Virus record (IMG/VR): IMGVR_UViG_3300045970_000794
Location: 248,001-312,000 of that record
Direction: 5' to 3' (one strand)
DNA: 64,000 nucleotides
The notes under the pieces were generated by a model. It saw only the letters and a program-made list of their open reading frames with translations, did no database searches and had not been told where the DNA came from. Shown here in pieces: positions 20,619 through 49,073 of the stretch (the stretch's first letter is position 1; the number at the start of each line of letters is the position of its first letter). Both the position numbers and the translations under genes were made by a program.

Positions 20619-20639
20619 AAAGCCCCTAATTGGGGCTTT
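20619..20639. terminator. Intrinsic terminator
   Basis: AAAGCCCC-TAATT-GGGGCTTT; same family as 6193 and 11654. Confidence 0.75.
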
Positions 20640-22095
20640 AATTATTTTGTCCGTCCACTATATGTGTGGATGGTAGAAGTTTTTTAAGCTTCTTATAATT
20701 TGATTCACCAATATCTTTTTCACTTACCGTGATACGAAACAAGCTACCACCTCTCGTTTTATCTAGTTCCGCAATTTCATCTGGAATATTCTCAATAGGG
20801 TTACCTATTAAGTTCATAAAGTCCAAATTCTTTAATTTACCAATTTCTTTAGGTAAAGATTTAATTTTATTACCCGAAATTGATAATAATTCTAATTTTG
20901 TTAAATTACCAATTGATGGGTGTAATTCATGCATATCTAATTTCATTAATAGTAATGAATCTAAATTCTTAAATTTTGATATATCAGGTAATTTAGGTAC
21001 CACTCTATTTTGTAATTTTAACATTGGTATATCAGCATCTAAAAAATCGAATAAACTTTCAGTAAAACCAAATTGAATTAAAAAGTCTAAATATAAATTA
21101 TTATCTATCGTCTTTAATTGTCTAGCCATACTGTCTAGCTCAGCGTGAAAGAATTCTGAAACACCCTCACTCGTTGATAAAATTGGTTCATATATATTAA
21201 CATTTGAACCATTTGTTCTATCTTTTATTTGCCTAGTCTCAAAATGAATTTGATAACATTCTTTTGATTCACCAGTAAACAATTTATTATTTATTATAAT
21301 ATAAATATTCGAATTTTTACCATTAGGCTTTTTGCTATTTTTAGTGTAACTGTCGAACATTGAATTACCAGGTTTAGTTGTACACCAACCAGCAAAATTA
21401 TTCATAACACAATTCGCATCAGTAGTTAATGGAATGAAAATAGTCCATTTCCTATCACGATATGGAATAATCGCTTGACCTAAATTAACAAAATTATTCA
21501 TTTGCCTCTCTAAATTTGAAGCTTCTCTCTCCATAAATGGGTCTACAGCATCAAATAACTGTGATAAAGAACGATATTGATTAATGTTTGATGCGTTATA
21601 TTTTAAATCTTCCCATTTTAAATTCGTTTCATCTTTATGGTGATTAAGCCATTTCCGATGTTCATTCGTATTACACCACTCAATAAATTTATGTTTACGT
21701 TTATTTTTTTCAAATAAAATTAAATATTCTTTAGCTACAGTTAAATCTTCTTCCGAAAATCTAATTGCATCTGGAATTCGCTCATCTTTAATTAAACGTT
21801 TAAATGTATTCAACATCCATTGAAGATTAGTTTTATTAACAGTTGGGTCAGCAAGAATCATATTAGTGAATATTTTTGCACTAACAGATATTTTAACTGT
21901 TGGCTTTCTTTTATCCTCTAATGTAATTTTTTTAATCGCAATTATATCATTAGATAGTCCTCTAATAAATTCATAATGAATTATATTATTCTTATCATTT
22001 GCTGATTCCTCAATTGCTTTAGCTTCTTCTACTGTAAAAACATCAAATTCTTTTGCTAAATAAATTAAACGCTCTTTATTATTAACATTACTCAT
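20638..22095 (-). CDS. Protein with C-terminal leucine-rich repeats
   Basis: LHPSIGNLTKLELLSISGNKIKSLPKEIGKLKNLDFMNLIGNPIENIPDEI. Confidence 0.8.
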   Translation of the reverse strand: MSNVNNKERLIYLAKEFDVFTVEEAKAIEESANDKNNIIHYEFIRGLSNDIIAIKKITLEDKRKPTVKISVSAKIFTNMILADPTVNKTNLQWMLNTFKRLIKDERIPDAIRFSEEDLTVAKEYLILFEKNKRKHKFIEWCNTNEHRKWLNHHKDETNLKWEDLKYNASNINQYRSLSQLFDAVDPFMEREASNLERQMNNFVNLGQAIIPYRDRKWTIFIPLTTDANCVMNNFAGWCTTKPGNSMFDSYTKNSKKPNGKNSNIYIIINNKLFTGESKECYQIHFETRQIKDRTNGSNVNIYEPILSTSEGVSEFFHAELDSMARQLKTIDNNLYLDFLIQFGFTESLFDFLDADIPMLKLQNRVVPKLPDISKFKNLDSLLLMKLDMHELHPSIGNLTKLELLSISGNKIKSLPKEIGKLKNLDFMNLIGNPIENIPDEIAELDKTRGGSLFRITVSEKDIGESNYKKLKKLLPSTHIVDGQNN

Positions 22096-25046: not shown

Positions 25047-25325
25047 ATGGCTCATGAAGACATTGAGGAAAGAGTTTATAAATATTTGTATCGTCATTTT
25101 CCAATTAAACGATTGAAAGATGATAGTACCAAACGTTTTAGACGTGGAATAGTAATTTACGATTCTTTTACAACTAAAAAAATGTTTTTTAATCCTAAAG
25201 AGAATGCCCATAAACTATATTCAGCAATTTATGATGATTTAGTATTGGTATTTGGATTAAATTCCGAAGATTTAACACCAATATTATTCAAATATCTATA
25301 TTTAAACAAATATTATAAATCTTAA
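25047..25325 (+). CDS. Hypothetical protein
   Basis: 92 aa ORF. Confidence 0.6.
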   Translation: MAHEDIEERVYKYLYRHFPIKRLKDDSTKRFRRGIVIYDSFTTKKMFFNPKENAHKLYSAIYDDLVLVFGLNSEDLTPILFKYLYLNKYYKS

Positions 25326-26269
25326 CCTTTATAATTTACAATAATTTTATCCAATAATGTTTTATTAGCTAAAACATCAATCCATTCAGCTGGAATATTA
25401 TCAACACCGTATAATATGGCCGCTAAGCCACCAGTTACTGCTGCGGTAGTATCAGTATCATCACCTAGGTTTACTGCCTTTAAAACAGCCTCAGAATAGC
25501 TATTACTGTTAATTATACACCAGATACTTGATTCCAATGTTGATATAACAAAACCACTACCCGATATATCATCTTCAACCACATCTTCTAATGTACCTAA
25601 TATCCTATCAAATGGTGACATATCCTTAATAATAGTTGGGTATTGGGTGATGAAATTTCGTATTTTATCTTCAGTTATAATTAATGCGACTAACTTTGCC
25701 ATTCCATAATTAATTTTATCCTTACAATTAATTAATGCGATTGCATATTCAACCAAAAAGAAACAAGCAAACTTACAATTAATATGAGCATGCGTTAAGC
25801 TTGAAACCTCACTAACAATTCGATATCGCTCATCTATTGTCATGTTTTTCACTAATGGAACTAATGCTAATGTCCTCATTAATGAACCATTACCTTGACT
25901 TCCTTGATGTACCCCACCGCATTCAGTCAATGGGTATCGCCTAGATTTAATATTATCAATACCATTGATTGTAGCAATCCCAGCATCGAAAACTTTATTA
26001 TGAGCCGTAAATTCAGCTCCATAATACCAATTAACAAAATTATTTGCGATTTTATCTAGATTATAGCCATCACTAATACCATCGGAAATTGCCAATAGGA
26101 GTGATGTATCGTCAGACCATGTACCAGCTACTTGATTATGACTGCCGTTACCGAACATAGTTGTTACTGGTTTATCTTTTAATCTACTTCGTTTAATAAA
26201 TTCAACTGGTACACCTAATGCATCACCAACTGCGGTGCCATAAACTATGGCATTCATCAATTTATTCAT
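25322..26269 (-). CDS. ADP-ribosylglycohydrolase (DraG/ARH family)
   Basis: GDALGVPVEF, WSDDT, GNGSLMR, GDDTDTTAAVTG. Confidence 0.92.
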   Translation of the reverse strand: MNKLMNAIVYGTAVGDALGVPVEFIKRSRLKDKPVTTMFGNGSHNQVAGTWSDDTSLLLAISDGISDGYNLDKIANNFVNWYYGAEFTAHNKVFDAGIATINGIDNIKSRRYPLTECGGVHQGSQGNGSLMRTLALVPLVKNMTIDERYRIVSEVSSLTHAHINCKFACFFLVEYAIALINCKDKINYGMAKLVALIITEDKIRNFITQYPTIIKDMSPFDRILGTLEDVVEDDISGSGFVISTLESSIWCIINSNSYSEAVLKAVNLGDDTDTTAAVTGGLAAILYGVDNIPAEWIDVLANKTLLDKIIVNYKG

Positions 26270-27982: not shown

Positions 27983-28501
27983 TTAACATTCGTTTACCCT
28001 ATCAATAGATTTTAATTTCATTTTAAGACGGTATACATACTTTTCATCCCAATCCACATTGTTTTTATCGCAGCAATCAGTACATGCTATACCATGTACC
28101 TTATTATACCTATATAATTTACCATTACATACTGGACATTCATACTCATAATTGTAACTAGGTACATTAATATCATTAGCATCAACGGTTGTTTTACCAT
28201 TACCACCTATTTTAATAAAGATTTTACGCCAATTATCACAATGTAATGCGCTTTTATATCTTATATATGCTAATGCATGAGCAATTTCATGAATTATAGT
28301 ATCAATAATCACATCCATATTATCATTTACATTACATAAAGAAACAGAATATGATAATGTAATCGTTTTATTAACAAAATCACAAGTACCGAAAGAAATT
28401 TTTGATGAATTAAACCCAAATTTCCAACCACGAGCTAATAATCCATGTTCATACATTAATTCCATAGCGTTTTTAGCGACATCTAATAATTTTTCTTTCA
28501 T
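27983..28501 (-). CDS. SprT-like zinc metalloprotease
   Basis: IIHEIAHA..H..W, C-terminal CxxC pairs; ATG at 28501. Confidence 0.8.
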   Translation of the reverse strand: MKEKLLDVAKNAMELMYEHGLLARGWKFGFNSSKISFGTCDFVNKTITLSYSVSLCNVNDNMDVIIDTIIHEIAHALAYIRYKSALHCDNWRKIFIKIGGNGKTTVDANDINVPSYNYEYECPVCNGKLYRYNKVHGIACTDCCDKNNVDWDEKYVYRLKMKLKSIDRVNEC

Positions 28502-28580
28502 ACTTTGCAAAGATACAACAATTTACTTCAATTTTCAAGATAAATAGTGAAAAATATTTGCATTTTAATTTTATTTATAT

Positions 28581-28588
28581 TATCTTTG
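28581..28588 (+). promoter_or_regulatory. Bacteroidota -7 box
   Basis: TATCTTTG with TTTG about 20 nt upstream. Confidence 0.65.
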
Positions 28589-28610
28589 CCATTAAATTAA
28601 TTAAAATATC

Positions 28611-29294
28611 ATGAAAAATAAAGAAATCGAAAGAAAATTCCTAATTAATGAGCTTGATTTACCAGACCTTTCATTATTATCCTATATGGATATAACCCAA
28701 GGGTATTTACCTGATATGTGTAACTCATATACCTATCGATTACGACATGTATTACATTATTCATGTGATAAAAGCGTTGTGGGTGAAGAATATTTCCAAA
28801 CTATTAAAGGTAAAGGTACCAAAATGCGCCCAGAATACGAAATTAATATGATGTATCAACAATTTCATGAACTATGGCCCCTATGTAGTGAAGTTACTAT
28901 ACATAAACATAGGTATATTATCAATTCACTTAATGACCCAACTGAACATTACTACTTAGACATATATAAAAATGGTGTATTAGGATTATATACTGTAGAA
29001 GTTGAGTTTAAAACATTAGAAGAATGTAATTCATTTATACCACCAGACTGGTTTGGTGTTGAATTAACCGAAGATTCTAGGTTTAGTAATTATTCATTAG
29101 CCATGAATGGGTTCTATGATATAATTGGTAATGGTTATATGTGGAAATGTGTTGACTGTGAAAAAGAATTCTTTAAAAAACCTAAACATATCTGCGTTAA
29201 TGGTGTTAAAAATAACTCACCAAAATTTTTATTCATACCATCTAATTTGAAGCCAGATATTGATTTAAATAAAGGGTTTAGAGCTTTAGAATAA
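28611..29294 (+). CDS. CYTH domain protein
   Basis: EIERKFL N-terminal motif, VEVEF, YSNxSLA-like motif. Confidence 0.85.
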   Translation: MKNKEIERKFLINELDLPDLSLLSYMDITQGYLPDMCNSYTYRLRHVLHYSCDKSVVGEEYFQTIKGKGTKMRPEYEINMMYQQFHELWPLCSEVTIHKHRYIINSLNDPTEHYYLDIYKNGVLGLYTVEVEFKTLEECNSFIPPDWFGVELTEDSRFSNYSLAMNGFYDIIGNGYMWKCVDCEKEFFKKPKHICVNGVKNNSPKFLFIPSNLKPDIDLNKGFRALE

Positions 29295-29335
29295 AAATTT
29301 ATCAATAAAAACTTGTTTATTAAAATTATTATTTA

Positions 29336-29343
29336 TATCTTTG
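29336..29343 (+). promoter_or_regulatory. -7 box for the envelope operon
   Basis: TATCTTTG 34 nt before ATG 29378. Confidence 0.6.
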
Positions 29344-29377
29344 CAGTTCAAATTGTAAAACTAAATTATTAAAATTT

Positions 29378-30091
29378 ATGGGATTCCTACAAAAATTAGG
29401 TCTGGTTGAAGAAACCGAACCTGTGGTAGAAGAAACTACCGAACAAATACCTTCAGAAACAAAAACTGTTGTGGCTAAAACTGAAGTAAAACAAACCACA
29501 CCTAAAAAATCAACTCTATCTTTTGCTCCATCAACTACAACATCATCAATTGGTGGTGCTATCGTTGGTAAAGTTAATAGCGACATATATGATAAGTTGT
29601 CAGTTGCTATTGAAGAAAACAATTTAGATGGTAATGATTTCTTAGAATTCATGCAGTCATTAACTAAAATGGCTAATCTTGTTGTTGATGAAAAAACCAA
29701 ATATAATATGGTTTTCGCAACATTAACTACTTCATCTGGTGGTATGACTTTAGACCATTTGATTGATTCTATCTCACATTATATTAATGTGATTAACAAT
29801 GAAAAATCTACATTTAAATCTGAAATGCAGAATGCATCCGCTGAAATGGTTGGTGAAAAAGAAAAAGCTGTTGAAACATTAACTAAAACTGCTCAAGAAA
29901 AAGCCGACCTTATCCAAAAATTAACCCAAGAAATTCAAGAAATTAATGGTGATATTAATACGCTTAAATCTGAATCCGAAGAATCGAAAGTTGTTATCGC
30001 TCAGAAAGAAGCTGATTTTGATGTTACCGTTAAACAATTAGAATCTCAAATTCTTGAGTTTAAAGATAAAATCGTTCAACATATCAAATAA
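29378..30091 (+). CDS. Coiled-coil protein, first gene of the envelope operon
   Basis: DFLEFMQSL motif, long heptad C-terminus. Confidence 0.7.
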   Translation: MGFLQKLGLVEETEPVVEETTEQIPSETKTVVAKTEVKQTTPKKSTLSFAPSTTTSSIGGAIVGKVNSDIYDKLSVAIEENNLDGNDFLEFMQSLTKMANLVVDEKTKYNMVFATLTTSSGGMTLDHLIDSISHYINVINNEKSTFKSEMQNASAEMVGEKEKAVETLTKTAQEKADLIQKLTQEIQEINGDINTLKSESEESKVVIAQKEADFDVTVKQLESQILEFKDKIVQHIK

Positions 30092-30125
30092 TTAAATAAA
30101 TTAAATAACTTAAAAAAAAGTAAAA

Positions 30126-31133
30126 ATGGAAAACAGTTTAGAACAAGGTGTGAAAAAGTTTTTCGACAAACCAGAAGGTAAAGTTGGAAAAGGATTTCTA
30201 GTATTAATTGGATTAGGTCTTTTATTTGTATTATACAAAGCATTACCTTATATCCTAATTTTATTAACAAATACATTGCATGCGATGTTATTGTTAGGTG
30301 CAATTCTTTTAATTATCTTTCTTGTAACCAACAAAAAGGTTCAAATGTTATTCTCATTTGGATTTCAAATGGTAATGAGGTGGATTACTGGGGTTTTTGT
30401 TGAATTAAATCCTATTGCGATTATCAGAATTCATATTGAAAATCTAAAACATAATCATAGTGCTATGGATGTTCACATTGGTGCGTTAGGTGGTGAAATA
30501 CGTGGACTTGAAGCTAAGATTAAAGATAATAAACAAAACATCGAAAAAAGTCTAAGAATAGCATCTTCAGCTAAAGAAAGCGACCAAAAAGGTCAAGCTT
30601 GGATTGAAGCTAGAAAAGCTGGTCGTAGAAAAGATGGTACTATTAAACTAACTGATTTATTAACTAAGCTTAAAAAAATCTATGATGTTTTAACTAAAAT
30701 GTATGAAATTTCTGGTTTCGTTATCGAAGATTTGGAAGATGACGTTCAAAATAGAGAAACTGAATATATTTCTATTAAAAAAGCCCATGCCGCTTTAATG
30801 TCTTCAATGTCAATCATTAAAGGTAACCCTAATGAAAGAGCTATGTTTGAATTAGCATTAGAAAAAATGGAAGAAGAAATTTCAACCAAACTTGGAACCA
30901 TGGACAGATTTATGGATATGTCAGCTAATTTAGTTGCTGGTATTGATATCGAACAAGGTATCTTCGCAGAAGATGGTATGCTTATGTTAGAAGAATACGA
31001 AAAAGGTGGTTTTGATGCTTTCTTAAATGATTTCGGTAAAATGCCTTCTGGTAATAACGTTGATGAAAATGAATCATTAAAGTCTACTGGTATTAAACCA
31101 TTGAAGAAAAATGCTGACGGTAAATATTTCTAA
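30126..31133 (+). CDS. Membrane-anchored coiled-coil (PspA-like) protein
   Basis: Two N-terminal TM segments then long amphipathic helices. Confidence 0.6.
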   Translation: MENSLEQGVKKFFDKPEGKVGKGFLVLIGLGLLFVLYKALPYILILLTNTLHAMLLLGAILLIIFLVTNKKVQMLFSFGFQMVMRWITGVFVELNPIAIIRIHIENLKHNHSAMDVHIGALGGEIRGLEAKIKDNKQNIEKSLRIASSAKESDQKGQAWIEARKAGRRKDGTIKLTDLLTKLKKIYDVLTKMYEISGFVIEDLEDDVQNRETEYISIKKAHAALMSSMSIIKGNPNERAMFELALEKMEEEISTKLGTMDRFMDMSANLVAGIDIEQGIFAEDGMLMLEEYEKGGFDAFLNDFGKMPSGNNVDENESLKSTGIKPLKKNADGKYF

Positions 31134-31161
31134 TAATTTAAACTTAAATAAAAATAAAACT

Positions 31162-31962
31162 ATGCAATATTTTAAAAGAAGATTCAAAACAAAGCGATTT
31201 ATAGTACTTATCGCATTAACTACTGGGTTAATTGTATTCCTATCGCTTACATCATCAGCACAGGAAGCTAAATTCCCAATCAAAGCTGATTCAACTATCG
31301 TTGATACAGTTAAAAAAGAATGCCTAAAACCAAGCTTATTCGGTAGCGGTATGCTTGTTAGTCAACACGTTTGGCGTGGAGTTTTACTCGATAGTAAACC
31401 AAATATTCAACCAAATATCGGTGTTGGTATCGGTGGTTTTGAATTTGGTGCATTTGGAACCGTTAGTTTCTTTAATGACTATTCTGAAGTAGATGTTTAT
31501 GCATCATATACTTATAAATCATTTAAGTTAATGGTAACAGATTTCTACATTGATTTAGGTGGTTCATCAAAGTCTCAAGATTATTTCGACTATTCTGATA
31601 CTGCTGGATATCATCACGTAATGTGTGATTTAATATTTATCGGTAGTGAAGCGATACCAGTTAGAGTTACTGCGTCAACTATGTTACATAGTGGATGGGA
31701 TGTAGACTCTCTAAATAAACCTAAATTCACAACATATTTAGAAGCTAGATACTTACGTAATGATTTCGAATTCTTTGTTGGTGGGATAACTGGTCAAAGT
31801 GATTTCTACCTTAACAAAAACAATGGATTTAATATAATTAATGTGGGTGCCGCATACAATTATCATTTAAGATTCAATGAAATTGAGATTCCATTATCCA
31901 CTCAATTGTGTGTTAATCCTCAATTGCAGAAAGCTTACCTAACTTTTTTAGTAATTTTTTAA
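31162..31962 (+). CDS. Outer-membrane beta-barrel (TorF/TIGR02001-like putative porin)
   Basis: Signal peptide, SQHVWRG..QP..G..FGAFG, EVDVYASY, terminal Phe. Confidence 0.6.
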   Translation: MQYFKRRFKTKRFIVLIALTTGLIVFLSLTSSAQEAKFPIKADSTIVDTVKKECLKPSLFGSGMLVSQHVWRGVLLDSKPNIQPNIGVGIGGFEFGAFGTVSFFNDYSEVDVYASYTYKSFKLMVTDFYIDLGGSSKSQDYFDYSDTAGYHHVMCDLIFIGSEAIPVRVTASTMLHSGWDVDSLNKPKFTTYLEARYLRNDFEFFVGGITGQSDFYLNKNNGFNIINVGAAYNYHLRFNEIEIPLSTQLCVNPQLQKAYLTFLVIF

Positions 31963-31980
31963 AAAAAAAGTGTTAAAAGA

Positions 31981-32012
31981 TTTGGAGAATAGAAATATTC
32001 TCCGTATCTTTG
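31981..32012 (+). promoter_or_regulatory. Promoter with a GAAA hairpin in its spacer
   Basis: TTTG-GAGAATA GAAA TATTCTCC-G-TATCTTTG. Confidence 0.75.
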
Positions 32013-32065
32013 CACTTCAGAATTAAACTAAAATGTTTTTTATTAACAATTAAAATTTTAAAACT

Positions 32066-33595
32066 ATGAGTAACACAATGTTAACAGTTAAAAAACCAGG
32101 TGGTATTACAACCCGTGGTAAAATCGTAATCGCAACTTTATTTGTTGGATTACTTGCAATCCTTTATTTCTCGTTCAGAGATAAAATTACTAAATTCGCT
32201 GGTGGTGCAACTAGTGGTGATGTGATTAAAATTGGCGTTGTTACATGGCCAGGTTATATCGGCGGTGAATACATGAACAACGGTTTTGCACCAAATATGG
32301 AATGCCGTTTCTATAAAGAATATGGTATTCAAGTTGAATTTAAAGTTCTTAACGATTTCTTAGCATCTAGAAAAGCTTTCGAATCTGGTGAAGTTGACCT
32401 TTTATGGTGTACTGCCGATGCTTTCCCAACTGAAATGGGTAGAGAAGGTACAATGGCTTTAAGTAATCCTAAATTCCTTTTCCAATCTGACTGGAGCCGT
32501 GGTGGTGATGCGATTGTTGTTGATATGTCTATCGATAAAATTTCTGACCTTAAAGGTAAAACTGTAGCTGTTGCTGAAGGAACTCCTAGTCACTCATTCC
32601 TTATTAACTTACTTAAAGCTAATAACATGACATTATCCGATATTGATGTGAAATCAGTACCAAGTGCTGTTGACGCTGCCGATGTTTTTAAACAAGGTGC
32701 ATGTGTAGCCTCAGTTGTATGGTCACCAGATGATATCGATTGTCTTAAAAAAGTTTCTGGTTCTAAAGTTTTAGCCTCTACTAAAGAAGCAACATATATT
32801 ATTGCCGATGGTTTTATTGCTAAAGACGAATATATTAAAAAGAACATTGAAAAATTACAAAAGCTTTACGATGGTTGGATGGTCGGTGCTGCTGAAATTA
32901 ATGCAAATAAAGATGGTGCTAGAAATAAAGCCGCAAAAATATTAGCCGATAATTTCCAAATGACTGAAAAAGATGCGTTAGCTTCACTTGATAACGTTAG
33001 ATTAGCCAATCACGGTGATAATAAAAATTTCTTCGGTCTTGGTGAATCAAATTGCGTAACTGGTGATATGTTATACACTACTATGTCTGGTGAATATCAA
33101 AAAATTAAAAAAGTTGAAAATCCTTTAATGTGGAGAGAAGTATCTGACGCAGTATTAGTTAAAGCATCAACCTTAACTGGTAACGGCCAATTAGCTGAAG
33201 TTAGTAAGAAATTTACCCCAGCTGGTTCAGATGTTAAAGAACGTAAAGCTTATTCTACTAAGAAAGTAACTATCAACTTCCCAAGTGGTTCTTATGCATT
33301 AACTGGTGAAGCTAAAGCTAAAATCAATAGAGAATACTCTGAAATTGCTAAAACCAATGGTGGTGCTAGAATTAGAGTAGAAGGAAATACTGATAACTCA
33401 GGTAATCCTAACTTTAACCAAACACTTTCTTATAATAGAGCTAAAGCTGTTGCAGAATATTTAACAAATCAATTTGGATTTGACTTCAATAGGTTCATTG
33501 TAATTGGAAATGGTTCTAAGCATGCAATAGATGCTGGTTCAAAAGGTGATGATGAAAATTATAGAACTACAGATTTCGGATTAATAAAAGAGTAA
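32066..33595 (+). CDS. ABC substrate-binding protein (SsuA/NMT1-like) fused to an OmpA-like C-terminal domain
   Basis: TWPGYIG, QSDWSRGGDAIV, DLKGKTVAV; IRVEGNTD..N..LS..RAKAV..YL. Confidence 0.85.
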   Translation: MSNTMLTVKKPGGITTRGKIVIATLFVGLLAILYFSFRDKITKFAGGATSGDVIKIGVVTWPGYIGGEYMNNGFAPNMECRFYKEYGIQVEFKVLNDFLASRKAFESGEVDLLWCTADAFPTEMGREGTMALSNPKFLFQSDWSRGGDAIVVDMSIDKISDLKGKTVAVAEGTPSHSFLINLLKANNMTLSDIDVKSVPSAVDAADVFKQGACVASVVWSPDDIDCLKKVSGSKVLASTKEATYIIADGFIAKDEYIKKNIEKLQKLYDGWMVGAAEINANKDGARNKAAKILADNFQMTEKDALASLDNVRLANHGDNKNFFGLGESNCVTGDMLYTTMSGEYQKIKKVENPLMWREVSDAVLVKASTLTGNGQLAEVSKKFTPAGSDVKERKAYSTKKVTINFPSGSYALTGEAKAKINREYSEIAKTNGGARIRVEGNTDNSGNPNFNQTLSYNRAKAVAEYLTNQFGFDFNRFIVIGNGSKHAIDAGSKGDDENYRTTDFGLIKE

Positions 33596-33612
33596 CAATC
33601 ATTAACTAAATG

Positions 33613-33642
33613 AAAAAGCACCTAAAATTTTGGGTGCTTTTT
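33613..33642 (+). terminator. Intra-operon hairpin/terminator
   Basis: AAAAAGCACC..GGTGCTTTTT between the binding-protein and permease genes. Confidence 0.65.
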
Positions 33643-33656
33643 TTAAAAACTTTAAT

Positions 33657-34619
33657 ATGGAAACATTCAAATCCCTTTTTAAATTAGGTGGAACAATCTC
33701 TAATAGATTATCTACCATTGTTGGAGTCTTAGGATTCGTATTCTTAATGGCTGTTTGGTATATTATTACCAGTGCAACTGGTTGGGTTAAACCTCAAACA
33801 ATTCCAAGCCCAAATAGTGTTCTATTCGCTTTTGTTGAAATGTTTTCAAAAGACCAGTTTTTACTTATGGTCTGGAAACCGTTATTGCTTTTAATTGGTA
33901 TTATTATTACATTATATTTCATACCATTCACAAAATTTTTAGTTAATTACGCCATTAGTGCTCTATTAATTTTATTCGCAATTTACCTTTTGATGGGTAA
34001 TTTCATAATGAAAGATGCACCAATTTCAATGAATATCTTATATTCACTACAACTAAATGTCGCTGGATATCTTAAAGCAATATTAATATCGATACCAATC
34101 GGATTCTTAATCGCATTATTCCCTTTACTAAGAAGTATGTTCAGTAAATATATCGATGCAATTAGATATGTTCCATTAACTGGTCTTATCGGTGTGTTCA
34201 TCGCATGGTTCGGAATCGCTTCTGGTATGAAAATTAATTTCCTAGCTTTTGGTATCATCGTATACCTATTACCTATCGTTGTTCAACGTGTTTATGAAAC
34301 TGAAAAAATTCACTTAGATACTATATTCACACTAGGTGCTAATAGCTGGCAAACGTTCCGTAAAATATACTGGCCATCCGTTATTTCTAAACTAATAACT
34401 GATATTAGAGTTATCACTGCAATATCTTGGACCTATATAATCGTAGCTGAAATGGCTAACAATGAAGGCGGTCTTGGTGGATTTGTATATACTTGCGCTA
34501 GACAAAGTAGATTGGATAAAATATTTGCTGTAATCCTTATTATCGTTATAATTGGATTCTTACAAGACATTCTATTCAAATGGTTAGATAAAAAAATTAA
34601 TAAATTTAAATACGTATAA
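33657..34619 (+). CDS. ABC transporter permease (NitT/TauT-like)
   Basis: Multiple TM segments; EAA-like TLGANSWQTFRKIYWP; SWTYIIVAE..GLG. Confidence 0.9.
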   Translation: METFKSLFKLGGTISNRLSTIVGVLGFVFLMAVWYIITSATGWVKPQTIPSPNSVLFAFVEMFSKDQFLLMVWKPLLLLIGIIITLYFIPFTKFLVNYAISALLILFAIYLLMGNFIMKDAPISMNILYSLQLNVAGYLKAILISIPIGFLIALFPLLRSMFSKYIDAIRYVPLTGLIGVFIAWFGIASGMKINFLAFGIIVYLLPIVVQRVYETEKIHLDTIFTLGANSWQTFRKIYWPSVISKLITDIRVITAISWTYIIVAEMANNEGGLGGFVYTCARQSRLDKIFAVILIIVIIGFLQDILFKWLDKKINKFKYV

Positions 34620-34621
34620 TC

Positions 34622-35530
34622 ATGGGTTATTTCGATTCAAAAAAAGATACTAAAGTAATTAGTGATATCGTTAGAGGTACTAGCGAAGAACCAACCGTTA
34701 AAGCCAAAACAATTAAATTTGATGAGTCAAAATATGACCCAATTGATAAAATTCAATTGAAGAATATCAATCAAGTTTATACTGATAAAAATGGTAATAA
34801 AAATGTTGTATTCAATGACTTTGACCTTGATATTAAAGATATTAAAGGTGGTGGTCAGTTCACAGTTATTGTCGGTGCCAGCGGTTGTGGTAAATCTACA
34901 TTGCTAAGATATATTGCTGGTCTTCAAAAACCAACATCTGGTGAAATATACCTTAATGGTAATCTAAGAACTAATAATGATAGAGTTGGTATGGTTTTCC
35001 AACAATACTCTTCAATGACATGGGCTACAGTACTTGAAAATGTTGCATTACCATTGCAGTTAAAAGGTGTTTCTAAAGCTGAAAGAGAAGAACAAGCTAT
35101 GGAAATGATTAAAATCGTTAACCTTGAAGGTCATGAAAATAAATTCGCACAATATCCAATCCTTAGTGGTGGTCAATTACAACGTGTAGCTATTGCTAGA
35201 AGCTTAATGGCTAATAGTGAAATGCTATTACTTGATGAACCATTCGGTGCCTTAGATATTAATACTAGATTGAGAATGCAAGATATGCTAATCGATATCT
35301 GGTCCAAAGTTAAAGGTGACCCAACATTCATTTTTGTTACCCACGATTTATCCGAAGCGGTTTATCTTGCTGATGAGATTTATGTGTTAAAGGCTAACCC
35401 AGGTGAAGTGTGTGAATTCATCGAAATTGATATCCCGATGAAAAGAACTTCAGCAATCAAAAGGACTCCAAAATTTATGGAATATGTTCACCACCTTGAA
35501 GATTTAATGATGAAGATTAATATCAAATAA
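34622..35530 (+). CDS. ABC transporter ATP-binding protein (NitT/TauT-like)
   Basis: GASGCGKST, LSGGQLQR, LLLDEPFGALD, VTHD. Confidence 0.95.
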   Translation: MGYFDSKKDTKVISDIVRGTSEEPTVKAKTIKFDESKYDPIDKIQLKNINQVYTDKNGNKNVVFNDFDLDIKDIKGGGQFTVIVGASGCGKSTLLRYIAGLQKPTSGEIYLNGNLRTNNDRVGMVFQQYSSMTWATVLENVALPLQLKGVSKAEREEQAMEMIKIVNLEGHENKFAQYPILSGGQLQRVAIARSLMANSEMLLLDEPFGALDINTRLRMQDMLIDIWSKVKGDPTFIFVTHDLSEAVYLADEIYVLKANPGEVCEFIEIDIPMKRTSAIKRTPKFMEYVHHLEDLMMKINIK

Positions 35531-35532: not shown

Positions 35533-36012
35533 ATGAATTTTAGAAGTAAACAAAATTTTAATTATTATGGTATTTTTAGATACATTAAAGCTGGGTCTCG
35601 ATTGCCACGTAAAATTAAAAAATGTGTATTAGGGTATAGAATGAGTAAAACGCAAATTAAAAAACATTATAATAATAGCGTTTTATTCGTTCACCAATAC
35701 CAATCTTCGACCTCATTAAGTGTTGATGTTATTTGCCCAGAATGTGGTTGTTATTGGACTATAACTGAAAATCATGGTGCCGAATATCCAGAAGTATATA
35801 TTACTGAATATTGCGCTAGATGCCACTGTTTGATTGGTAGTGCCGATAATTCACCAACATACCTTTTCTATGAATGTGATGATAATGAGTTCGTTAACAA
35901 ACATAAAATTAGAACCATTTTTATGATAAATCGTGAGAGATATGAGGGTAAATTAAAAGAAAAAGAACGCTCAATGAATAAAAATAACACCGATTTCTGT
36001 GACTTTTTTTAA
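35533..36012 (+). CDS. Hypothetical protein with CxxC pairs
   Basis: CPECGC and CARC. Confidence 0.6.
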   Translation: MNFRSKQNFNYYGIFRYIKAGSRLPRKIKKCVLGYRMSKTQIKKHYNNSVLFVHQYQSSTSLSVDVICPECGCYWTITENHGAEYPEVYITEYCARCHCLIGSADNSPTYLFYECDDNEFVNKHKIRTIFMINRERYEGKLKEKERSMNKNNTDFCDFF

Positions 36013-36026
36013 AATAGACGATTAAT

Positions 36027-36521
36027 ATGGCAATGAAACTAGATAAACCTATTGTAGTTGAATCAACTACATTGGTTAATAAACAAAATGTAATGGTTTG
36101 CTTACAAACTGACCAAACGATTAGACTTAAACTAAAATCAGCTGATTCAAAAGTGTTAACTATTAGTGTTGAAGATTTATATAAATTCCTTCAAACTAAA
36201 GATAATCCAATACCAATTAAAAAAGTTGAAGTAACACCATCAGTACCAGAAACTAAAATCAATAAATCTAATTTAGAAGTTAGAGACTGTAATGATAATG
36301 AACCATTATTCAATATGCAAGATTTTAGAAGTGCTTATATGATTCTTCCAATACCTTACGATGTTAAGGTCAAACTTGAAGCTAAAACATCAGAGTTATT
36401 AGGATTATATAAACGTAAAAAATCAGATAAAACTGAATCCACTGAGAAAAATAGTGTTCAAGTTGGTGTATCCGCTTCCGAAAGTACTACAACCGAAAAA
36501 AAGAAACGGAAAAAATCATAA
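36027..36521 (+). CDS. Hypothetical protein
   Basis: 164 aa ORF. Confidence 0.65.
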   Translation: MAMKLDKPIVVESTTLVNKQNVMVCLQTDQTIRLKLKSADSKVLTISVEDLYKFLQTKDNPIPIKKVEVTPSVPETKINKSNLEVRDCNDNEPLFNMQDFRSAYMILPIPYDVKVKLEAKTSELLGLYKRKKSDKTESTEKNSVQVGVSASESTTTEKKKRKKS

Positions 36522-37591: not shown

Positions 37592-37599
37592 TATCTTTG
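37592..37599 (+). promoter_or_regulatory. Bacteroidota -7 box
   Basis: TATCTTTG before the YqeY gene. Confidence 0.6.
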
Positions 37600-37622
37600 C
37601 ACCATAATTTAAAAATTGTTTT

Positions 37623-38030: not shown

Positions 38031-38071
38031 ATGGAGGGGCTGGGGTGGTTTTTAATTTAGCTACCAAACAC

Positions 38072-39262
38072 ATGGAATATAAAGAATTAGCATCATACGG
38101 CGATGAAAGTGTTACGAAACTATTAGATATGTATCGAAATGATAAATATAATACTAGAGTCGTATACTATAATAGTCGTGAAAAAGCAATCAAATGTAGA
38201 TTAGCCGCTTTCATTAAAGAAGATAATACATTTGAATTAGCTATATTCAAAAAAACTTGGGGTATATCCAAAATTAATGTGATTTATAGTCGAGAAGTTA
38301 AAGAAATGTCAATATTTAAATCCAAAAAAGGATATTATACCGTTAAAGGTAAATTGATTAAACCATTAATTCTTAATGATATTTGGCTAAGTAGATTCTC
38401 AAAAGAAATATTGTTATTCATTAAAGATTATATACCTTTCATTGAACTACAAGTTAAACATAATCTACTTGTTCATAAATCATTTAACTATATCATTGAA
38501 CATAAATTAACTTCATTAAAGAGAATGACCATATTTGAGTATGGTATTCCTTATTCTAGAATTAAGAAACTAATGGAAAGACCATCATTCTATGACTCAT
38601 TACCCGATTTTAAAAGAGTGCTTTATTATAATAAAGAGTATATTACCAAACTAGAAAATATTAATCTGGAAATCTTTGATAAACAACATCATTTTCATAT
38701 ATTCAGCGATGCTGCCAAAATGGCCCGATGTCTTAATGTTAAAATCAATGCATCATGGTCAATTAAAAGACTTAAAGAAGAACATGATAATTTAGCGGTT
38801 ACATTAACCGAAATAGTATTCACAGCCGATAATCGAGAATTATCTATTAGTAAAGTATATAGAGACTTCTCAATATTCGCCAACTATCGACTATTACAAA
38901 CAACTAAAGAATTAGCACTAGAAAGCCAAAAACAAAAACATTGCATAGTGACTTATTCTAACAAAGTTAATATGCATGCTTGCGGTATCTATCACATTGA
39001 TGGATATACCCTAGAATTAATAATTAGCTCAAATAAATTAGTCATTAACCAATTCAGAGGATATGGCAATGATGATGCACCCGATGAATTAAAACAATCA
39101 GTTCAACTTAAATTGGATGAATATCACCAAAAACTTAATGGTGAAAATAAAAAAATTAATGACACAATTAATATCTTTAGTAGTGACTTTGATAATCTTG
39201 AACAAGTTCAACAAATTAATATGGTTAACCTTGCTAATGATGATATATTAAATATTTTTTAA
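38072..39262 (+). CDS. PcfJ-like domain protein
   Basis: ELALES..QKHCI.TY, TLEL, QFRGYGN. Confidence 0.65.
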   Translation: MEYKELASYGDESVTKLLDMYRNDKYNTRVVYYNSREKAIKCRLAAFIKEDNTFELAIFKKTWGISKINVIYSREVKEMSIFKSKKGYYTVKGKLIKPLILNDIWLSRFSKEILLFIKDYIPFIELQVKHNLLVHKSFNYIIEHKLTSLKRMTIFEYGIPYSRIKKLMERPSFYDSLPDFKRVLYYNKEYITKLENINLEIFDKQHHFHIFSDAAKMARCLNVKINASWSIKRLKEEHDNLAVTLTEIVFTADNRELSISKVYRDFSIFANYRLLQTTKELALESQKQKHCIVTYSNKVNMHACGIYHIDGYTLELIISSNKLVINQFRGYGNDDAPDELKQSVQLKLDEYHQKLNGENKKINDTINIFSSDFDNLEQVQQINMVNLANDDILNIF

Positions 39263-44954: not shown

Positions 44955-45000
44955 GTTAAAGGTTAATGCAAAGATAAGGATAATATTTCTATTATCCAAA
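44955..45000 (-). promoter_or_regulatory. Module P7 with GAAA hairpin spacer
   Basis: TTTG-GATAATA GAAA TATTATCC-T-TATCTTTG. Confidence 0.75.
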
Positions 45001-45011
45001 TTTTTTTGCAT

Positions 45012-45404
45012 TTATTTTAATTGGTTATAAAAAATACCTTTTTCAGCATTTTCAAGGTCTTTACCAGTTGCTCCACGAAACCAAGCATCCCAATAAGTTC
45101 TTTGACAACTAGAATCCATTAAACGACCAATAATGATTTCTCTAATGTTTTCTTTATATGCTTGCATATCGCTTAATAAGTGGTCTGCAATGTCTTCATT
45201 TGATAACATAATATTTTTTACTGTAACATCTTTATTTAGTTTTAAAAATGTTTCCTCATACTTAGCTTTAGCTTCTTCTAATGTTTTAGCATCCACAATA
45301 CACCATTCTTCGGAGTTAAAAGAAGCTTCTTCAACTGTATTGTACTGTGTTAATGTTTCACACTTACAATCATCATCAATATCATATCCTAATATAAATT
45401 TCAT
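45012..45404 (-). CDS. Hypothetical protein
   Basis: ATG 45404 (MKFILG); the track start is a promoter TTG. Confidence 0.6.
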   Translation of the reverse strand: MKFILGYDIDDDCKCETLTQYNTVEEASFNSEEWCIVDAKTLEEAKAKYEETFLKLNKDVTVKNIMLSNEDIADHLLSDMQAYKENIREIIIGRLMDSSCQRTYWDAWFRGATGKDLENAEKGIFYNQLK

Positions 45405-45414
45405 AGCAGTAAGT

Positions 45415-45484
45415 TTTAATTGGTTAATACTTTGCAAAGATACTACAAATAATCCACATTACCAAATATTATTTAATATATTTT
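45415..45484 (-). promoter_or_regulatory. Module P8
   Basis: -7 box 45442-45435. Confidence 0.85.
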
Positions 45485-45500
45485 ATTCCAGTAAATGGGG

Positions 45501-45532
45501 AAAGGCTGTCCCCCACTACAAGGACAGCCCTT
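45501..45532 (-). terminator. Terminator hairpin
   Basis: GGCTGTCC..GGACAGCC stem. Confidence 0.7.
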
Positions 45533-45563
45533 TAACAAAATAATCAACCTTAAAAATAATCAC

Positions 45564-46109
45564 TTATTTAAATAAATCAAAAATAATTTCTTCTTTACAA
45601 TAACTTGGTACTTCAATTTCCAGACTTATCACATCCCTAGCCCATGTACCAATTAATTCAACATTACCTTTTTTTGCTTCGTGGTTAATATGATAATCAC
45701 CGCCGCCACGTCCGTTGCCTTCGCAAGTCATTAAAGGAAGTGGGTGTATAATCCAACCGTCAACATCAACACATTTTCTTTTATCAATGAATTGATTTTT
45801 GCTGTGGTTAACCAAGTAAGGGAATATTTCTCTTTTGATAACTGTATCAACTGGATTAACTTTTGTTTTATCAGCACATCTACCATATACATTGGATTTA
45901 AGACCTTTGCATTCATCAGCATAATCACCAGCCCAAACAACCCTTTGTGGCTTCTGCATTATTAAACTTTCGAATGCACCAACAAATCTGTTTAACAACC
46001 AAGAATGTTCCATAAGGTTAAGACCATTGTCATAGTCATGAGAATATATCCATGCTTTGACTGTTCTTTTATTGTCGCCTAAAATGGCGGGGTTATAATA
46101 CTGTCCCAT
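45564..46109 (-). CDS. Hypothetical phage protein
   Basis: ATG 46109 (MGQYY); LMEHSW, HPLPLMT..GNGRGGGD. Confidence 0.7.
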   Translation of the reverse strand: MGQYYNPAILGDNKRTVKAWIYSHDYDNGLNLMEHSWLLNRFVGAFESLIMQKPQRVVWAGDYADECKGLKSNVYGRCADKTKVNPVDTVIKREIFPYLVNHSKNQFIDKRKCVDVDGWIIHPLPLMTCEGNGRGGGDYHINHEAKKGNVELIGTWARDVISLEIEVPSYCKEEIIFDLFK

Positions 46110-46119
46110 AATATAAAGT

Positions 46120-46171
46120 TTTAATTGGTTAATATGATACAAAGGTAAGTAAAATATTTTAATAAACCAAA
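46120..46171 (-). promoter_or_regulatory. Module P9
   Basis: -7 box 46147-46140. Confidence 0.75.
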
Positions 46172-46551
46172 CTTTTTAACACTTTTCTTTCAATTACTTC
46201 ACTTTTTGCAAAGAAACATTGTTTACCCGATAAACTTGGAACATAGTCACTAACAACATACTCAACTAATACGAATCCATGTTTTAAGATTTCTCTATTA
46301 TACCCTTTAAACCATTTACGCAATTTATTAATGGTATCACAAGTGGAATAATATTTACTAATCATACCACGATGTGAGACTGGTAAATCTTCATATAATA
46401 TTGGGTGCCCATCTGATTTCCAACTATGTTCACGACAAACCTTACGTTGAAAATCCAATACCTCCTCAACATTATTGAATGGTTTCTCATCTGCTCTATA
46501 AAAACCATCCTCATCGAATGGGCTTTCATAACGATATATAGTCATTTCCAT
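46159..46551 (-). CDS. Hypothetical protein
   Basis: 130 aa; carries the leader motif but no promoter. Confidence 0.65.
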   Translation of the reverse strand: MEMTIYRYESPFDEDGFYRADEKPFNNVEEVLDFQRKVCREHSWKSDGHPILYEDLPVSHRGMISKYYSTCDTINKLRKWFKGYNREILKHGFVLVEYVVSDYVPSLSGKQCFFAKSEVIERKVLKSLVY

Positions 46552-46584
46552 AATACGATTGGTTTAATTGATTAATACTAACAC

Positions 46585-47175: not shown

Positions 47176-47186
47176 GATTTTTGGTT

Positions 47187-47275
47187 TTAGTATTGATTAA
47201 TATAATGCAAAGGTAATAAAAAAAAGTTGCTATCCAAATTTTTTAGCAACTTTTTTCATATTATTTAATATATTT
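47187..47275 (-). promoter_or_regulatory. Module P10 (13-bp inverted repeat over the -33 box)
   Basis: -7 box 47215-47208; arms 47220-47232 and 47244-47256. Confidence 0.8.
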
Positions 47276-47792: not shown

Positions 47793-47803
47793 AATATAAA
47801 GTT

Positions 47804-47874
47804 TTAGTATTGATTAATATAATGCAAAGATACAAAATATAATTCAAATAAACAAATATTATTTAATATATTTT
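47804..47874 (-). promoter_or_regulatory. Module P11
   Basis: -7 box 47832-47825. Confidence 0.85.
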
Positions 47875-47886
47875 TAATTATTTTAC

Positions 47887-48082: not shown

Positions 48083-48087
48083 TTTTG

Positions 48088-48119
48088 CAAAGATACAACA
48101 AATAATTTACTTTACCAAA
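48088..48119 (-). promoter_or_regulatory. Module P12 (core only)
   Basis: TTTG 48119-16, N20, TATCTTTG 48095-88. Confidence 0.7.
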
Positions 48120-48514: not shown

Positions 48515-48523
48515 GGTATAAAG

Positions 48524-48594: not shown

Positions 48595-48622
48595 TAATAT
48601 ATTTTTAATTATTTTTCAAAAT

Positions 48623-49062: not shown

Positions 49063-49073
49063 GATAAATAGTT

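What the first reader, a model, noticed from the sequence alone, without database searches (positions are those of the whole stretch)
29378..35530. Complete six-gene trans-envelope module on a phage
Seen: co-oriented coiled-coil protein, TM-anchored PspA-like protein, TorF-like outer-membrane barrel, SsuA/NMT1-like binding protein fused to an OmpA peptidoglycan-binding domain, permease and ATPase, with promoters at 29336 and 32005. Together they cover outer membrane, cell wall and inner membrane. Inference: an envelope-spanning uptake or stress apparatus (nutrient import for the virocell, membrane stabilisation or superinfection exclusion). Whole ABC importers with a porin are unusual phage cargo, and the substrate is unknown.
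Basis: partly seen in the sequence, partly recalled or inferred. Interest (0 to 1): 0.78.

Follow-up and report, generated by a model that had tools for sequence, protein, structure and literature searches.

The report
Phage PspA-like plus ABC-importer envelope module
A complete 362-kb phage of Bacteroidota carries an operon joining a membrane-anchored PspA/Vipp1-like protein and a coiled-coil partner to a cell-wall-tethered ABC importer, plus an outer-membrane barrel in this lineage only; the five-gene core recurs in Lak megaphages, other huge phages and many Bacteroidota, has been noted in the literature, and has an untested role.

Summary
The six co-oriented genes are real, sit at the stated coordinates, and lie on a genuine, closed phage genome. 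A is a coiled-coil protein. B has two transmembrane helices and a PspA/Vipp1-like hairpin. C is a divergent Gcw_chp/TorF-like barrel. D is a SsuA/NMT1-type binding protein with a membrane anchor and an OmpA domain. E is the permease and F an intact ATPase. Both "promoters" are Bacteroidota-type -33/-7 promoters of a class reused across this phage.

The conserved unit has five genes, not six. A-B-D-E-F occurs in that order in 31 IMG/VR viral contigs and, with model-confirmed synteny, in Lak-A1 and the 735-kb phage LR756501. The other 14 Lak megaphages carry D. D was matched in at least 555 bacterial species genomes, nearly all Bacteroidota among the 80 kept. The barrel is an insertion limited to the window's clade.

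All six genes are under purifying selection, and an independent metagenome holds the same junctions. The bacterial operon was described computationally in 2024, and PspA next to complete ABC transporters in huge phages in an October 2026 preprint.

Best reading: an envelope-maintenance module coupled to solute import, taken into the phage programme. Substrate and role in infection are inferred, not shown. The module is a new variant of a known kind, of moderate interest.

The parts
29312..29345 (+). Promoter of the A-B-C unit: a weak -33-like cTTGt, then an exact -7 box TATCTTTGCA at 29336-29345. The ATG of A lies 42 nt after the start of the box.
29378..30091 (+). A: 237-aa cytoplasmic protein with no TM segment. 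Residues 1-66 are disordered, 68-118 form a 3-helix bundle, and 125-235 form one long helix (coiled-coil former). It is the conserved partner of B, and its fold has no annotated relative.
30126..31133 (+). B: 335-aa inner-membrane protein. It has two TM helices (about residues 23-45 and 50-70), an alpha0-like helix (70-94), then a PspA/Vipp1 (ESCRT-III superfamily) helical hairpin (96-231) and two further helices.
31162..31962 (+). C: an outer-membrane beta-barrel of the Gcw_chp/TorF-like kind, with a Sec signal peptide. The ORF opens at 31111, but the likely start is Met18 at 31162. It is an insertion specific to this phage lineage.
31981..32014 (+). Promoter of the D-E-F unit: -33 TTTGG (31981-31985), a spacer holding the palindrome GGAGAATAGAAATATTCTCC (31984-32003, also scored as terminator-like), and the -7 box TATCTTTGCA (32005-32014).
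32066..33595 (+). D: 509-aa protein. It has an N-terminal TM anchor (about 19-37), a periplasmic class-II solute-binding domain of the NMT1/SsuA/TauA kind (about 55-360), a linker, and an OmpA-like peptidoglycan-binding domain (405-498) with the NTDxxG...LSxxRA motif intact.
33630..34619 (+). E: ABC permease (BPD_transp_1, TauC/SsuC-like) with an EAA-type loop, EMANNEGG, at residue 274. The start codon is uncertain: TTG at 33630, or the ATG at residue 10 of the translation (33657).
34622..35530 (+). F: ABC ATPase (TauB/NrtD-like) with Walker A, Q-loop, LSGGQ, Walker B and H-loop all present.

Best explanation
The block is a phage-resident copy of an envelope module of Bacteroidota, in two linked halves.

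D-E-F half (shown by homology). This is a type-I, binding-protein-dependent ABC importer. Its binding protein D is fixed in place: an N-terminal helix holds it in the inner membrane and a C-terminal OmpA domain holds it to peptidoglycan.

A-B half. B is an integral inner-membrane protein whose cytoplasmic part has the PspA/Vipp1 (ESCRT-III superfamily) hairpin fold. A is its constant coiled-coil partner.

How it works (inferred). B, with A, assembles on the cytoplasmic face of the inner membrane and stabilises or reshapes it, as PspA and Vipp1 do. Meanwhile the tethered importer brings in a small solute of unknown identity that serves the same envelope or osmotic homeostasis.

The barrel (inferred). 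In the window's lineage a Gcw_chp/TorF-like barrel, C, was inserted between B and D. It probably gives that solute a way across the outer membrane.

Expression (inferred). The phage transcribes the block from two host-type sigma-A promoters of the class that also precedes its runs of small genes. The module is therefore probably made by the host polymerase, likely early. Its likely purpose is to keep the inner membrane sealed and energised through the long infection cycle of a huge phage.
For: Parts:
- Pfam and NCBIfam hits for D, E and F, with intact motifs.
- Profile-profile match of the B family to 20 canonical Bacteroidota PspA: probability 90.7%, E 1.2e-6, 168 columns, in register from the shared DP(I) motif.
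- 23 of 51 B-family members hit PF04012 at E <= 0.01, best 1.9e-7.
- In the B model the hairpin has pLDDT above 90. The top Foldseek and VIA-align matches are Vipp1 and PspA: 6zvs TM 0.88 by target, 8qhx rmsd 1.6 A over 138 residues, Z 12.3-13.5.
- C matches Gcw_chp-type barrels at TM 0.71/0.84, and 7 of 21 family members hit PF09694.

Unit:
- The order A-B-D-E-F is kept exactly in 63 loci, in all viral loci, in Lak-A1 and in LR756501.
- Pairwise distances of the five proteins correlate at r 0.71-0.94.

Function retained in phages: dN/dS is 0.05-0.24 for all six genes among four phage genomes.

Phage programme: promoter class.

Not an artefact:
- Closed genome.
- An independent sample bridges the Z-A and C-D junctions with zero differences.

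Literature: the same component set is described in bacteria (PMC11237479), and PspA beside complete ABC transporters in huge phages.
Against: - The window's own B does not reach PF04012 or PF03357, even at E <= 10.
- Profile searches of PDB sequences return only generic coiled coils.
- VIA-align Z-scores of unrelated helical hairpins come within 1-2 units of the Vipp1 matches.
- A shows no detectable relation to PspA or to B.
- The AAA+ ATPase that accompanies the operon in 19 bacterial loci is absent from the phage.
- The substrate is unknown: all binding-protein hits lie far below the equivalog cut-offs.
- No expression data exist: no RNA run was listed.
- Nothing shows that the two halves touch each other. 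Co-inheritance would also follow from plain linkage.
Confidence: 0.55

Rival explanations
1. Plain nutrient-uptake auxiliary gene set. D-E-F, with C as a porin, imports a nitrogen, sulfur or carbon source such as a sulfonate, taurine, nitrate or urea-like solute to feed virion production. A and B are only accessory or unrelated neighbours.
For: D, E and F fall in the NitT/TauT family (SsuA, TauA/C/B, NrtB/D, putative urea binding protein). F matches PHROG families classed as auxiliary metabolic or host-takeover genes. The barrel insertion makes sense for uptake. Bacillus phage G keeps E, F and two D copies without A or B.
Against: A and B are kept next to D-E-F in that order in 63 loci across phages and bacteria that share under 30% identity in A and B. 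The OmpA tether and membrane anchor of D are invariant and are not features of ordinary nutrient binding proteins. No hit reaches any substrate-specific cut-off.
Confidence: 0.2
2. Conflict module. The PspA-like B, with A, repairs or pre-empts inner-membrane damage caused by host abortive-infection effectors or by competing phages. Alternatively, the tethered complex blocks DNA entry by superinfecting phages.
For: PspA-family proteins counter membrane damage (established knowledge; summarised in the papers read). The promoter class is shared with runs of small genes that look like early host-takeover genes. The viral versions are long resident and fast-diverging: mean identity in B is 28% among viral copies against 60% among bacterial copies.
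Against: There is no match to any PADLOC defence family beyond generic ATPase and MotB-like domains. The same operon is chromosomal and widespread in Bacteroidota with housekeeping neighbours. An importer has no obvious part in such a role.
Confidence: 0.15
3. Artefact or dead cargo. The block is host DNA mis-assembled into a phage bin, or a recent transfer that is decaying.
For: The closest named relatives of D are bacterial proteins at about 50% identity. GC is slightly higher in the block, 0.31-0.33 against about 0.29 nearby.
Against: The genome is closed at 362 kb with a 127-bp overlap. A single 27-kb contig at even depth spans the block, and a second sample and study bridges the junctions. 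Phage-type promoters sit inside the block. Four phage genomes keep all six genes at dN/dS 0.05-0.24. The virus/bacterium label changes only twice on the B tree.
Confidence: 0.02

Closest known systems
Bacterial PspA / TM-anchored divergent Snf7 / AAA+ / ABC ATPase / permease / PBPb-OmpA operons (Ravi et al. 2024, mSystems, PMC11237479; example OGG56892.1)
   Same: It has a binding protein with a signal anchor and an OmpA domain, a permease, an ABC ATPase, a membrane-anchored divergent ESCRT-III-superfamily protein and a further coiled-coil protein. The direct bacterial orthologues in Bacteroidota share the window's gene order.
   Different: The phage has no AAA+ ATPase. Gene order differs from the published Handelsmanbacteria example. 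A is not detectably PspA-like. The window's lineage adds an outer-membrane barrel. The published description is purely computational.
Phage-encoded PspA next to complete ABC transporters in huge phages (Yuan and Chen, bioRxiv 10.64898/2026.10.24.761521, Oct 2026)
   Same: It reports huge phages, a PspA-family gene, and an adjacent binding protein, permease and ATPase (15 cases). It also reports beta-barrel outer-membrane proteins near transport genes.
   Different: I could not tell whether the preprint's 15 cases are this family. B is TM-anchored and misses the Pfam PspA model. The preprint text read here does not mention the OmpA fusion of the binding protein, partner A, or the presence of this module in Lak megaphages.
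PspA / Vipp1 (IM30), the bacterial ESCRT-III superfamily
   Same: It has an alpha1-alpha2/3 hairpin in register, a preceding alpha0-like helix and following helices. Profile-profile homology supports the match.
   Different: PspA and Vipp1 are peripheral membrane proteins. B is integral, with two TM helices. B falls below Pfam thresholds. Polymerisation has not been tested.
NitT/TauT-family ABC importers (SsuABC, TauABC, NrtABCD)
   Same: The permease and ATPase families match, and the binding-protein fold class matches.
   Different: The binding protein is membrane-anchored and fused to a peptidoglycan-binding domain. All scores are far below the equivalog cut-offs, so the substrate cannot be transferred.
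Gcw_chp (PF09694) / TorF-like and Phenol_MetA_deg outer-membrane barrels
   Same: The predicted fold matches at TM 0.69-0.72 by query. 7 of 21 family members hit PF09694. C has a signal peptide.
   Different: The window's protein itself has no Pfam hit. The family is tiny: 21 proteins were found among 5.8 billion. Every context examined lies inside this phage module.

Membership tests
PspA/IM30/Vipp1 (PF04012; ESCRT-III superfamily), for B | Match to the Pfam model above its gathering score | tested here: not met
   The window's B has no hit, and the whole phage genome has none even at E <= 10. 23 of 51 relatives hit below threshold, best 1.9e-7.
PspA/IM30/Vipp1 (PF04012; ESCRT-III superfamily), for B | Profile-level homology to canonical PspA | tested here: met
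   hhalign of the B family against 20 Bacteroidota PspA gives probability 90.7%, E 1.2e-6 over 168 columns, with B 95-276 aligned to PspA 24-207.
PspA/IM30/Vipp1 (PF04012; ESCRT-III superfamily), for B | alpha0 helix plus alpha1-alpha2/3 helical hairpin fold | tested here: met
   The model has helices 70-94, 96-151 and 155-231, with pLDDT above 90 in the hairpin. Vipp1 and PspA are the top matches. The margin over unrelated hairpins is small.
PspA/IM30/Vipp1 (PF04012; ESCRT-III superfamily), for B | Self-assembly into rings or rods, and membrane binding or remodelling | not testable with these tools
   This needs purified protein, liposomes and electron microscopy.
Type-I ABC importer, NitT/TauT family, for D-E-F | ATPase with Walker A, Q-loop, LSGGQ, Walker B and H-loop | tested here: met
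   GASGCGKS at 85, VFQ at 125, LSGGQ at 181, MLLLDE at 201 and VTH at 239. PF00005 E 6e-29.
Type-I ABC importer, NitT/TauT family, for D-E-F | BPD_transp_1 permease with an EAA loop | tested here: met
   PF00528 E 7e-17. EMANNEGG at residue 274.
Type-I ABC importer, NitT/TauT family, for D-E-F | Cognate solute-binding protein of known specificity | tested here: inconclusive
   NMT1 and SsuA_fam hits lie well under the curated cut-offs, for example 54 bits against 163.5. The nearest solved structures are SsuA, NrtA-like and TauA at E 1e-10 to 5e-7.
OmpA-like peptidoglycan-binding domain (PF00691), for the C-terminus of D | Pfam match above cut-off with the conserved NTDxxG...LSxxRA motif | tested here: met
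   58.7 bits against a cut-off of 27.2. The motif is at residue 441 and invariant across 18 homologues.
Gcw_chp/TorF-like outer-membrane barrel (PF09694), for C | Pfam match or shared barrel fold, plus a signal peptide | tested here: inconclusive
   The window's protein has no Pfam hit. 7 of 21 relatives hit, best 2.9e-9. Atlas models match at TM 0.71 by query and 0.84 by hit. A signal peptide is present.
PspA / TM-Snf7 / AAA+ / ABC / PBPb-OmpA operon (PMC11237479) | PBPb+OmpA binding protein, permease, ABC ATPase and TM-anchored ESCRT-III-like protein in one operon | tested here: met
   literature.
PspA / TM-Snf7 / AAA+ / ABC / PBPb-OmpA operon (PMC11237479) | Linked two-domain AAA+ ATPase | tested here: not met
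   It is absent from the 362-kb genome and from all 31 viral loci. It adjoins the module in 19 bacterial loci.
PspA / TM-Snf7 / AAA+ / ABC / PBPb-OmpA operon (PMC11237479) | A separate soluble PspA | tested here: not met
   A shows no profile or fold similarity to PspA. Only isolated weak hits exist in relatives.
Known anti-phage defence systems (PADLOC) | Match of any component to a defence-system model beyond generic domains | tested here: not met
   Only generic ABC-ATPase, MotB-like and coiled-coil hits were found.

The most novel reading that the evidence does not exclude
The A-B-D-E-F module may be an old, largely vertically kept organ of huge Bacteroidota phages rather than a recent host loan. 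In this reading an integral-membrane ESCRT-III-like machine, tied to a wall-tethered transporter, lets the phage actively reshape or reseal the host inner membrane. It might do so to build or protect an infection-specific membrane state, or to survive membrane-targeting abortive infection. The bacterial copies could even descend from phage ones. What allows this reading: viral copies are far more diverse than the sampled bacterial ones, the virus/bacterium label changes only twice on the B tree, and the carrier phages share only about 30% identity in TerL. The bacterial sample was biased towards the nearest 80 genomes and the trees are unrooted, so direction is not shown.
Probability: 0.15. 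Interest if true: 0.8.

Novelty: new variant of a known kind. Interest (0 to 1): 0.45.

Why it matters
Huge phages, including the Lak megaphages of human and animal guts, consistently keep a multi-gene apparatus aimed at the host envelope. The finding ties a large, unnamed family of membrane-anchored PspA/Vipp1-like proteins (about 1,600 clusters at 50% identity, with no Pfam model) to a fixed partner set. That offers a defined system for asking what bacterial ESCRT-III-like proteins do when coupled to transport, and how large phages manage membrane integrity during long infections. Bacterial orthologues occur in cultured Aquimarina and Tenacibaculum species, and a partial version occurs in the cultured Bacillus phage G, so the question can be tested at the bench.

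Tried and rejected
- Profile searches of the A and B families against PDB sequences gave only generic coiled coils.
- hhalign of A against B, and of A against PspA, gave nothing.
- The A model has no PDB match. Its AFDB matches are only uncharacterised kin.
- PF04012 and PF03357 searched against the whole phage genome gave no match.
- The bacterial AAA+ partner was searched in the phage genome and not found.
- The barrel C was searched in LR756501 and not found. G and H, the two genes after F, have no homologue in any related locus, so they are not part of the module.
- PADLOC gave no defence family.
- No RNA runs were listed, so expression is untested.
- A DNA-level search of GenBank phages found only the permease and ATPase genes of LR756501. 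Protein-level search was needed to find the Lak phages and phage G.
- A single-sequence scan of viral contigs found only three close kin. An alignment-based scan was needed.
- The hairpin at 31983-32004 was first considered a terminator between C and D. It lies inside the spacer of the D promoter and recurs in another promoter, so its role is open.
- The SaoA and SaoP names from NCBIfam come from an unrelated selenium-linked transporter and score far below cut-off.
- D was not modelled, so the ligand pocket was not examined.

Full report
**Setting**

The window is bases 248,001-312,000 of a 362,102-bp IMG/VR virus record that CheckV rates 100% complete. I found an exact 127-bp terminal overlap, so the assembly closes on itself, and overall GC is 30.1%. 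The window holds a T4-like portal gene (75-2144, minus strand), a large terminase gene (2460-4244, minus strand) and a ClpB-like chaperone gene. It contains no tRNA genes.

**Observation**

I call them A to F.

- **D (509 aa)** has one N-terminal hydrophobic helix. It then has a solute-binding domain of the NMT1/SsuA/TauA kind and a C-terminal OmpA domain. PF00691 scores 58.7 bits against a cut-off of 27.2, and the NTDxxG...LSxxRA motif is intact.
- **E** is a BPD_transp_1 permease with an EAA-type loop.
- **F** is an ABC ATPase with every catalytic motif present.
- **A, B and C** have no Pfam hit of their own.

**Protein B**

B starts with two hydrophobic helices.

- Of 51 family members, 23 hit PF04012 (PspA_IM30) at E <= 0.01. 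The best is 1.9e-7, and no other family recurs.
- I collected 20 canonical PspA genes from Bacteroidota genomes. A profile-profile comparison with the B family gave probability 90.7% and E 1.2e-6 over 168 columns. It runs from a shared DP(I) motif, with B residues 95-276 aligned to PspA 24-207.
- An AlphaFold2 model built on the family alignment has a helical hairpin (96-151 and 155-231) at pLDDT above 90. A helix at 70-94 precedes it.
- Foldseek's top PDB hits are Vipp1 and PspA. Examples are 6zvs at TM 0.88 by target with rmsd 1.9 A, and E. coli PspA 4whe at TM 0.72. CHMP1B and Asgard ESCRT-IIIB follow.
- VIA-align gives Z 12.3-13.5 for Vipp1 and PspA, with model residues 73-228 aligned to Vipp1 2-157. 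Unrelated hairpins reach Z 11-12, so fold evidence alone would be weak.

Taken together, B is a membrane-anchored, divergent member of the PspA/Vipp1 branch of the ESCRT-III superfamily. It nevertheless fails the Pfam membership test itself. A profile of the family finds 1,617 clusters at 50% identity among 1.84 billion representatives, all about 320-360 aa long.

**Protein A**

A has no hydrophobic segment. Its model shows a disordered N-terminus, a small 3-helix bundle (68-118) and one 110-residue helix. It has no PDB match, and its AFDB matches are only uncharacterised kin. No profile similarity to B or to PspA was found. It is a constant coiled-coil partner of unknown fold class.

**Protein C**

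C has a signal peptide. The family consensus starts at Met18, so the gene probably begins at 31162 and does not overlap B. Its Atlas model matches Gcw_chp-type and Phenol_MetA_deg barrels of Bacteroidota at TM 0.69-0.72 by query and up to 0.84 by hit. Seven of 21 family members hit PF09694. The family is tiny: only 21 proteins were found among 5.8 billion.

**Promoters**

- Within one mismatch the window holds 30 such sites against 10 expected, and none of 100 shuffles reached 30.
- The 14 exact copies share the consensus AATA..T..AATAATATTTGG, a 19-nt spacer, then TATCTTTGCA, with an ATG about 38-40 nt later.
- That is the -33 TTTG / -7 TAnnTTTG layout of Bacteroidota sigma-A promoters (established knowledge).
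- Most copies precede small minus-strand genes at 44.9-52.6 kb.
- The D promoter has a perfect -33. The A promoter has a weaker one.
- A palindrome in the D promoter's spacer (31984-32003) recurs in the promoter at 44976. The scan had scored it as terminator-like.

So the block is wired into the phage's own transcription scheme as two units, A-B-C and D-E-F. The host is almost certainly a member of Bacteroidota.

**Not an artefact**

Two pond metagenomes hold the region.

- In one, probably the source sample, a single 27-kb contig at depth 56 spans 28300-34299 without a difference.
- In the other, from a different sample and study, contigs without differences bridge the upstream gene into A, and C into D.
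- Among the window's phage and three relatives, dN/dS is 0.05-0.24 for all six genes. dS is saturated, so the ratios are rough but clearly below 1.

**Distribution and synteny**

D has more than 1,600 homologues. Bacterial ones, at about 50% identity, are named [quoted passage not shown].

- In Bacteroidota chromosomes the neighbours are A-like, B-like, D, E and F in the same order.
- An alignment-based scan found 31 IMG/VR viral contigs, 11 of them 200 kb or longer and the largest 676 kb. It also matched at least 555 bacterial species genomes. The 80 that were kept are nearly all Bacteroidota, such as Saprospiraceae, Aquimarina, Tenacibaculum and Chitinophagales.
- The order A-B-D-E-F is exact in 63 loci and holds in all viral loci. 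C occurs only in the window and its nearest kin.
- More distant C homologues, at 47-49% identity, occupy the same slot between B and D.
- In GenBank phages, D is in all 15 Lak megaphages of Prevotella (41-42% identity), in the 735-kb phage LR756501 (36%), and twice in Bacillus phage G (27%).
- Lak-A1 has the full A-B-D-E-F set, and so does LR756501. Phage G has E, F and two D copies but no A or B.
- The carrier phages are only distantly related, with TerL about 30% identical over its N-terminal domain.
- An AAA+ ATPase adjoins the operon in 19 bacterial loci. It is in no viral locus and not in this phage genome.

**Evolution**

- On a D tree, viral sequences are deep and paraphyletic, and the sampled bacteria form a crown clade.
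- On a B tree the virus/bacterium label needs only two changes, against 23 when shuffled. Mean pairwise identity is 28% among viral copies and 60% among bacterial ones.
- Distances of the five proteins correlate at r 0.71-0.94.

This fits long residence of the whole unit in phage genomes with few exchanges. However, the bacterial sample was the nearest 80 and the trees are unrooted, so no direction can be claimed.

**Literature**

- Ravi et al. 2024 (PMC11237479) describe bacterial operons with PspA, a membrane-anchored divergent Snf7, an AAA+ ATPase, an ABC ATPase, a permease and a PBPb+OmpA binding protein. They suggest a link between membrane remodelling and solute transport.
- Of the Lak papers listed, those that hold "Lak phage" in title or abstract show zero occurrences of "ABC transporter" and "OmpA".
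- D also falls in an existing PHROG of unknown function, phrog_25518.

**Mechanism**

*Shown by homology:*

- D-E-F is a binding-protein-dependent importer whose binding protein is anchored in the inner membrane and tied to peptidoglycan.
- B is an integral inner-membrane protein with a PspA/Vipp1-like cytoplasmic domain.
- C is an outer-membrane barrel.

*Inferred:*

- B, with A, stabilises or reshapes the inner membrane.
- The importer handles a solute tied to the same homeostasis.
- C supplies outer-membrane passage in this lineage.
- The phage makes the module from host-type promoters to keep the membrane sealed and energised during a long infection.

The rivals are plain nutrient uptake, a conflict or exclusion role, and artefact. 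The first two are not excluded. The last is refuted. PADLOC gives no support for a known defence system.

**Verdict**

It is recurrent rather than unusual cargo, and the kind has been described computationally. The substrate, the expression pattern and the role in infection remain untested.

Noticed in passing
window 44967-52559 and 61986-61995 (minus strand), also 28506-28515 and 37592-37601: There are 14 exact copies of TATCTTTGCA with a shared extended consensus: AATA..T..AATAATATTTGG, a 19-nt spacer, then the box, then an ATG about 38-40 nt later. Most precede small genes in a tight run. This looks like a host-polymerase (Bacteroidota sigma-A) promoter class for an early or host-takeover gene block. 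Genome-wide there are 30 exact copies, concentrated at 270-300 kb.
   Followed up: partly
window 31984-32003 and the spacer of the promoter at 44976 (minus strand): Two promoters of this class carry nearly the same palindrome in their spacer, GGAGAATAGAAATATTCTCC and GGATAATAGAAATATTATCC. It may be an operator for a shared regulator.
   Followed up: no
L147 (Prevotella phage Lak-A1, MK250016.1) 3376-9742: Lak megaphages of human and animal guts carry the full A-B-D-E-F module, about 4.5 kb downstream of their TerL. Of the Lak papers listed, those that hold "Lak phage" in title or abstract show zero occurrences of "ABC transporter" and "OmpA".
   Followed up: partly
L146 (Bacillus phage G, JN638751.1) gp243-gp250: A cultured 498-kb phage of a Gram-positive host has the permease (gp243), the ATPase (gp245) and two tandem D paralogues (gp249, gp250). 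It has no A or B. gp246-gp248 lie between them and have no assigned function.
   Followed up: partly
L148 4952-5990: In one metagenomic relative of the six-gene version, B is split into two ORFs of 163 and 164 aa. This may be a frameshift, a sequencing error or decay.
   Followed up: no
L003/L004 9759-12409: In 19 bacterial loci, mostly Saprospiraceae and Chitinophagales, A-B-D is not followed by E-F. In one Chitinophagales genome it is followed instead by a 636-aa Cys-rich secreted protein and a 245-aa lipoprotein-like protein, neither with a Pfam hit.
   Followed up: partly
window 14085-16607, 20638-22095, 25322-26269, 38045-39262, 52941-53954: Other cargo in the window: a full-length ClpB-like two-ring AAA+ chaperone, a leucine-rich-repeat protein, an ADP-ribosylglycohydrolase, a PcfJ-like protein and a DUF932 protein.
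   Followed up: no
window 28611-29294 and 35533-36521: The upstream gene (227 aa, weak CYTH hit, phrog_6660) has its own promoter box at 28581 and recurs in two relatives, but not next to the module. The two genes after F (159 aa, Cys-rich; and 164 aa) have no homologue in any related locus.
   Followed up: partly
L038 and L039 (contigs binned as Bacteroidia/Bacteroidales MAGs): Their D proteins, at 60-62% identity, are sister to the window's phage clade rather than to the bacterial crown group. They may be phage contigs binned into bacterial MAGs. No other gene shared with the window's phage was found in their flanks.
   Followed up: partly
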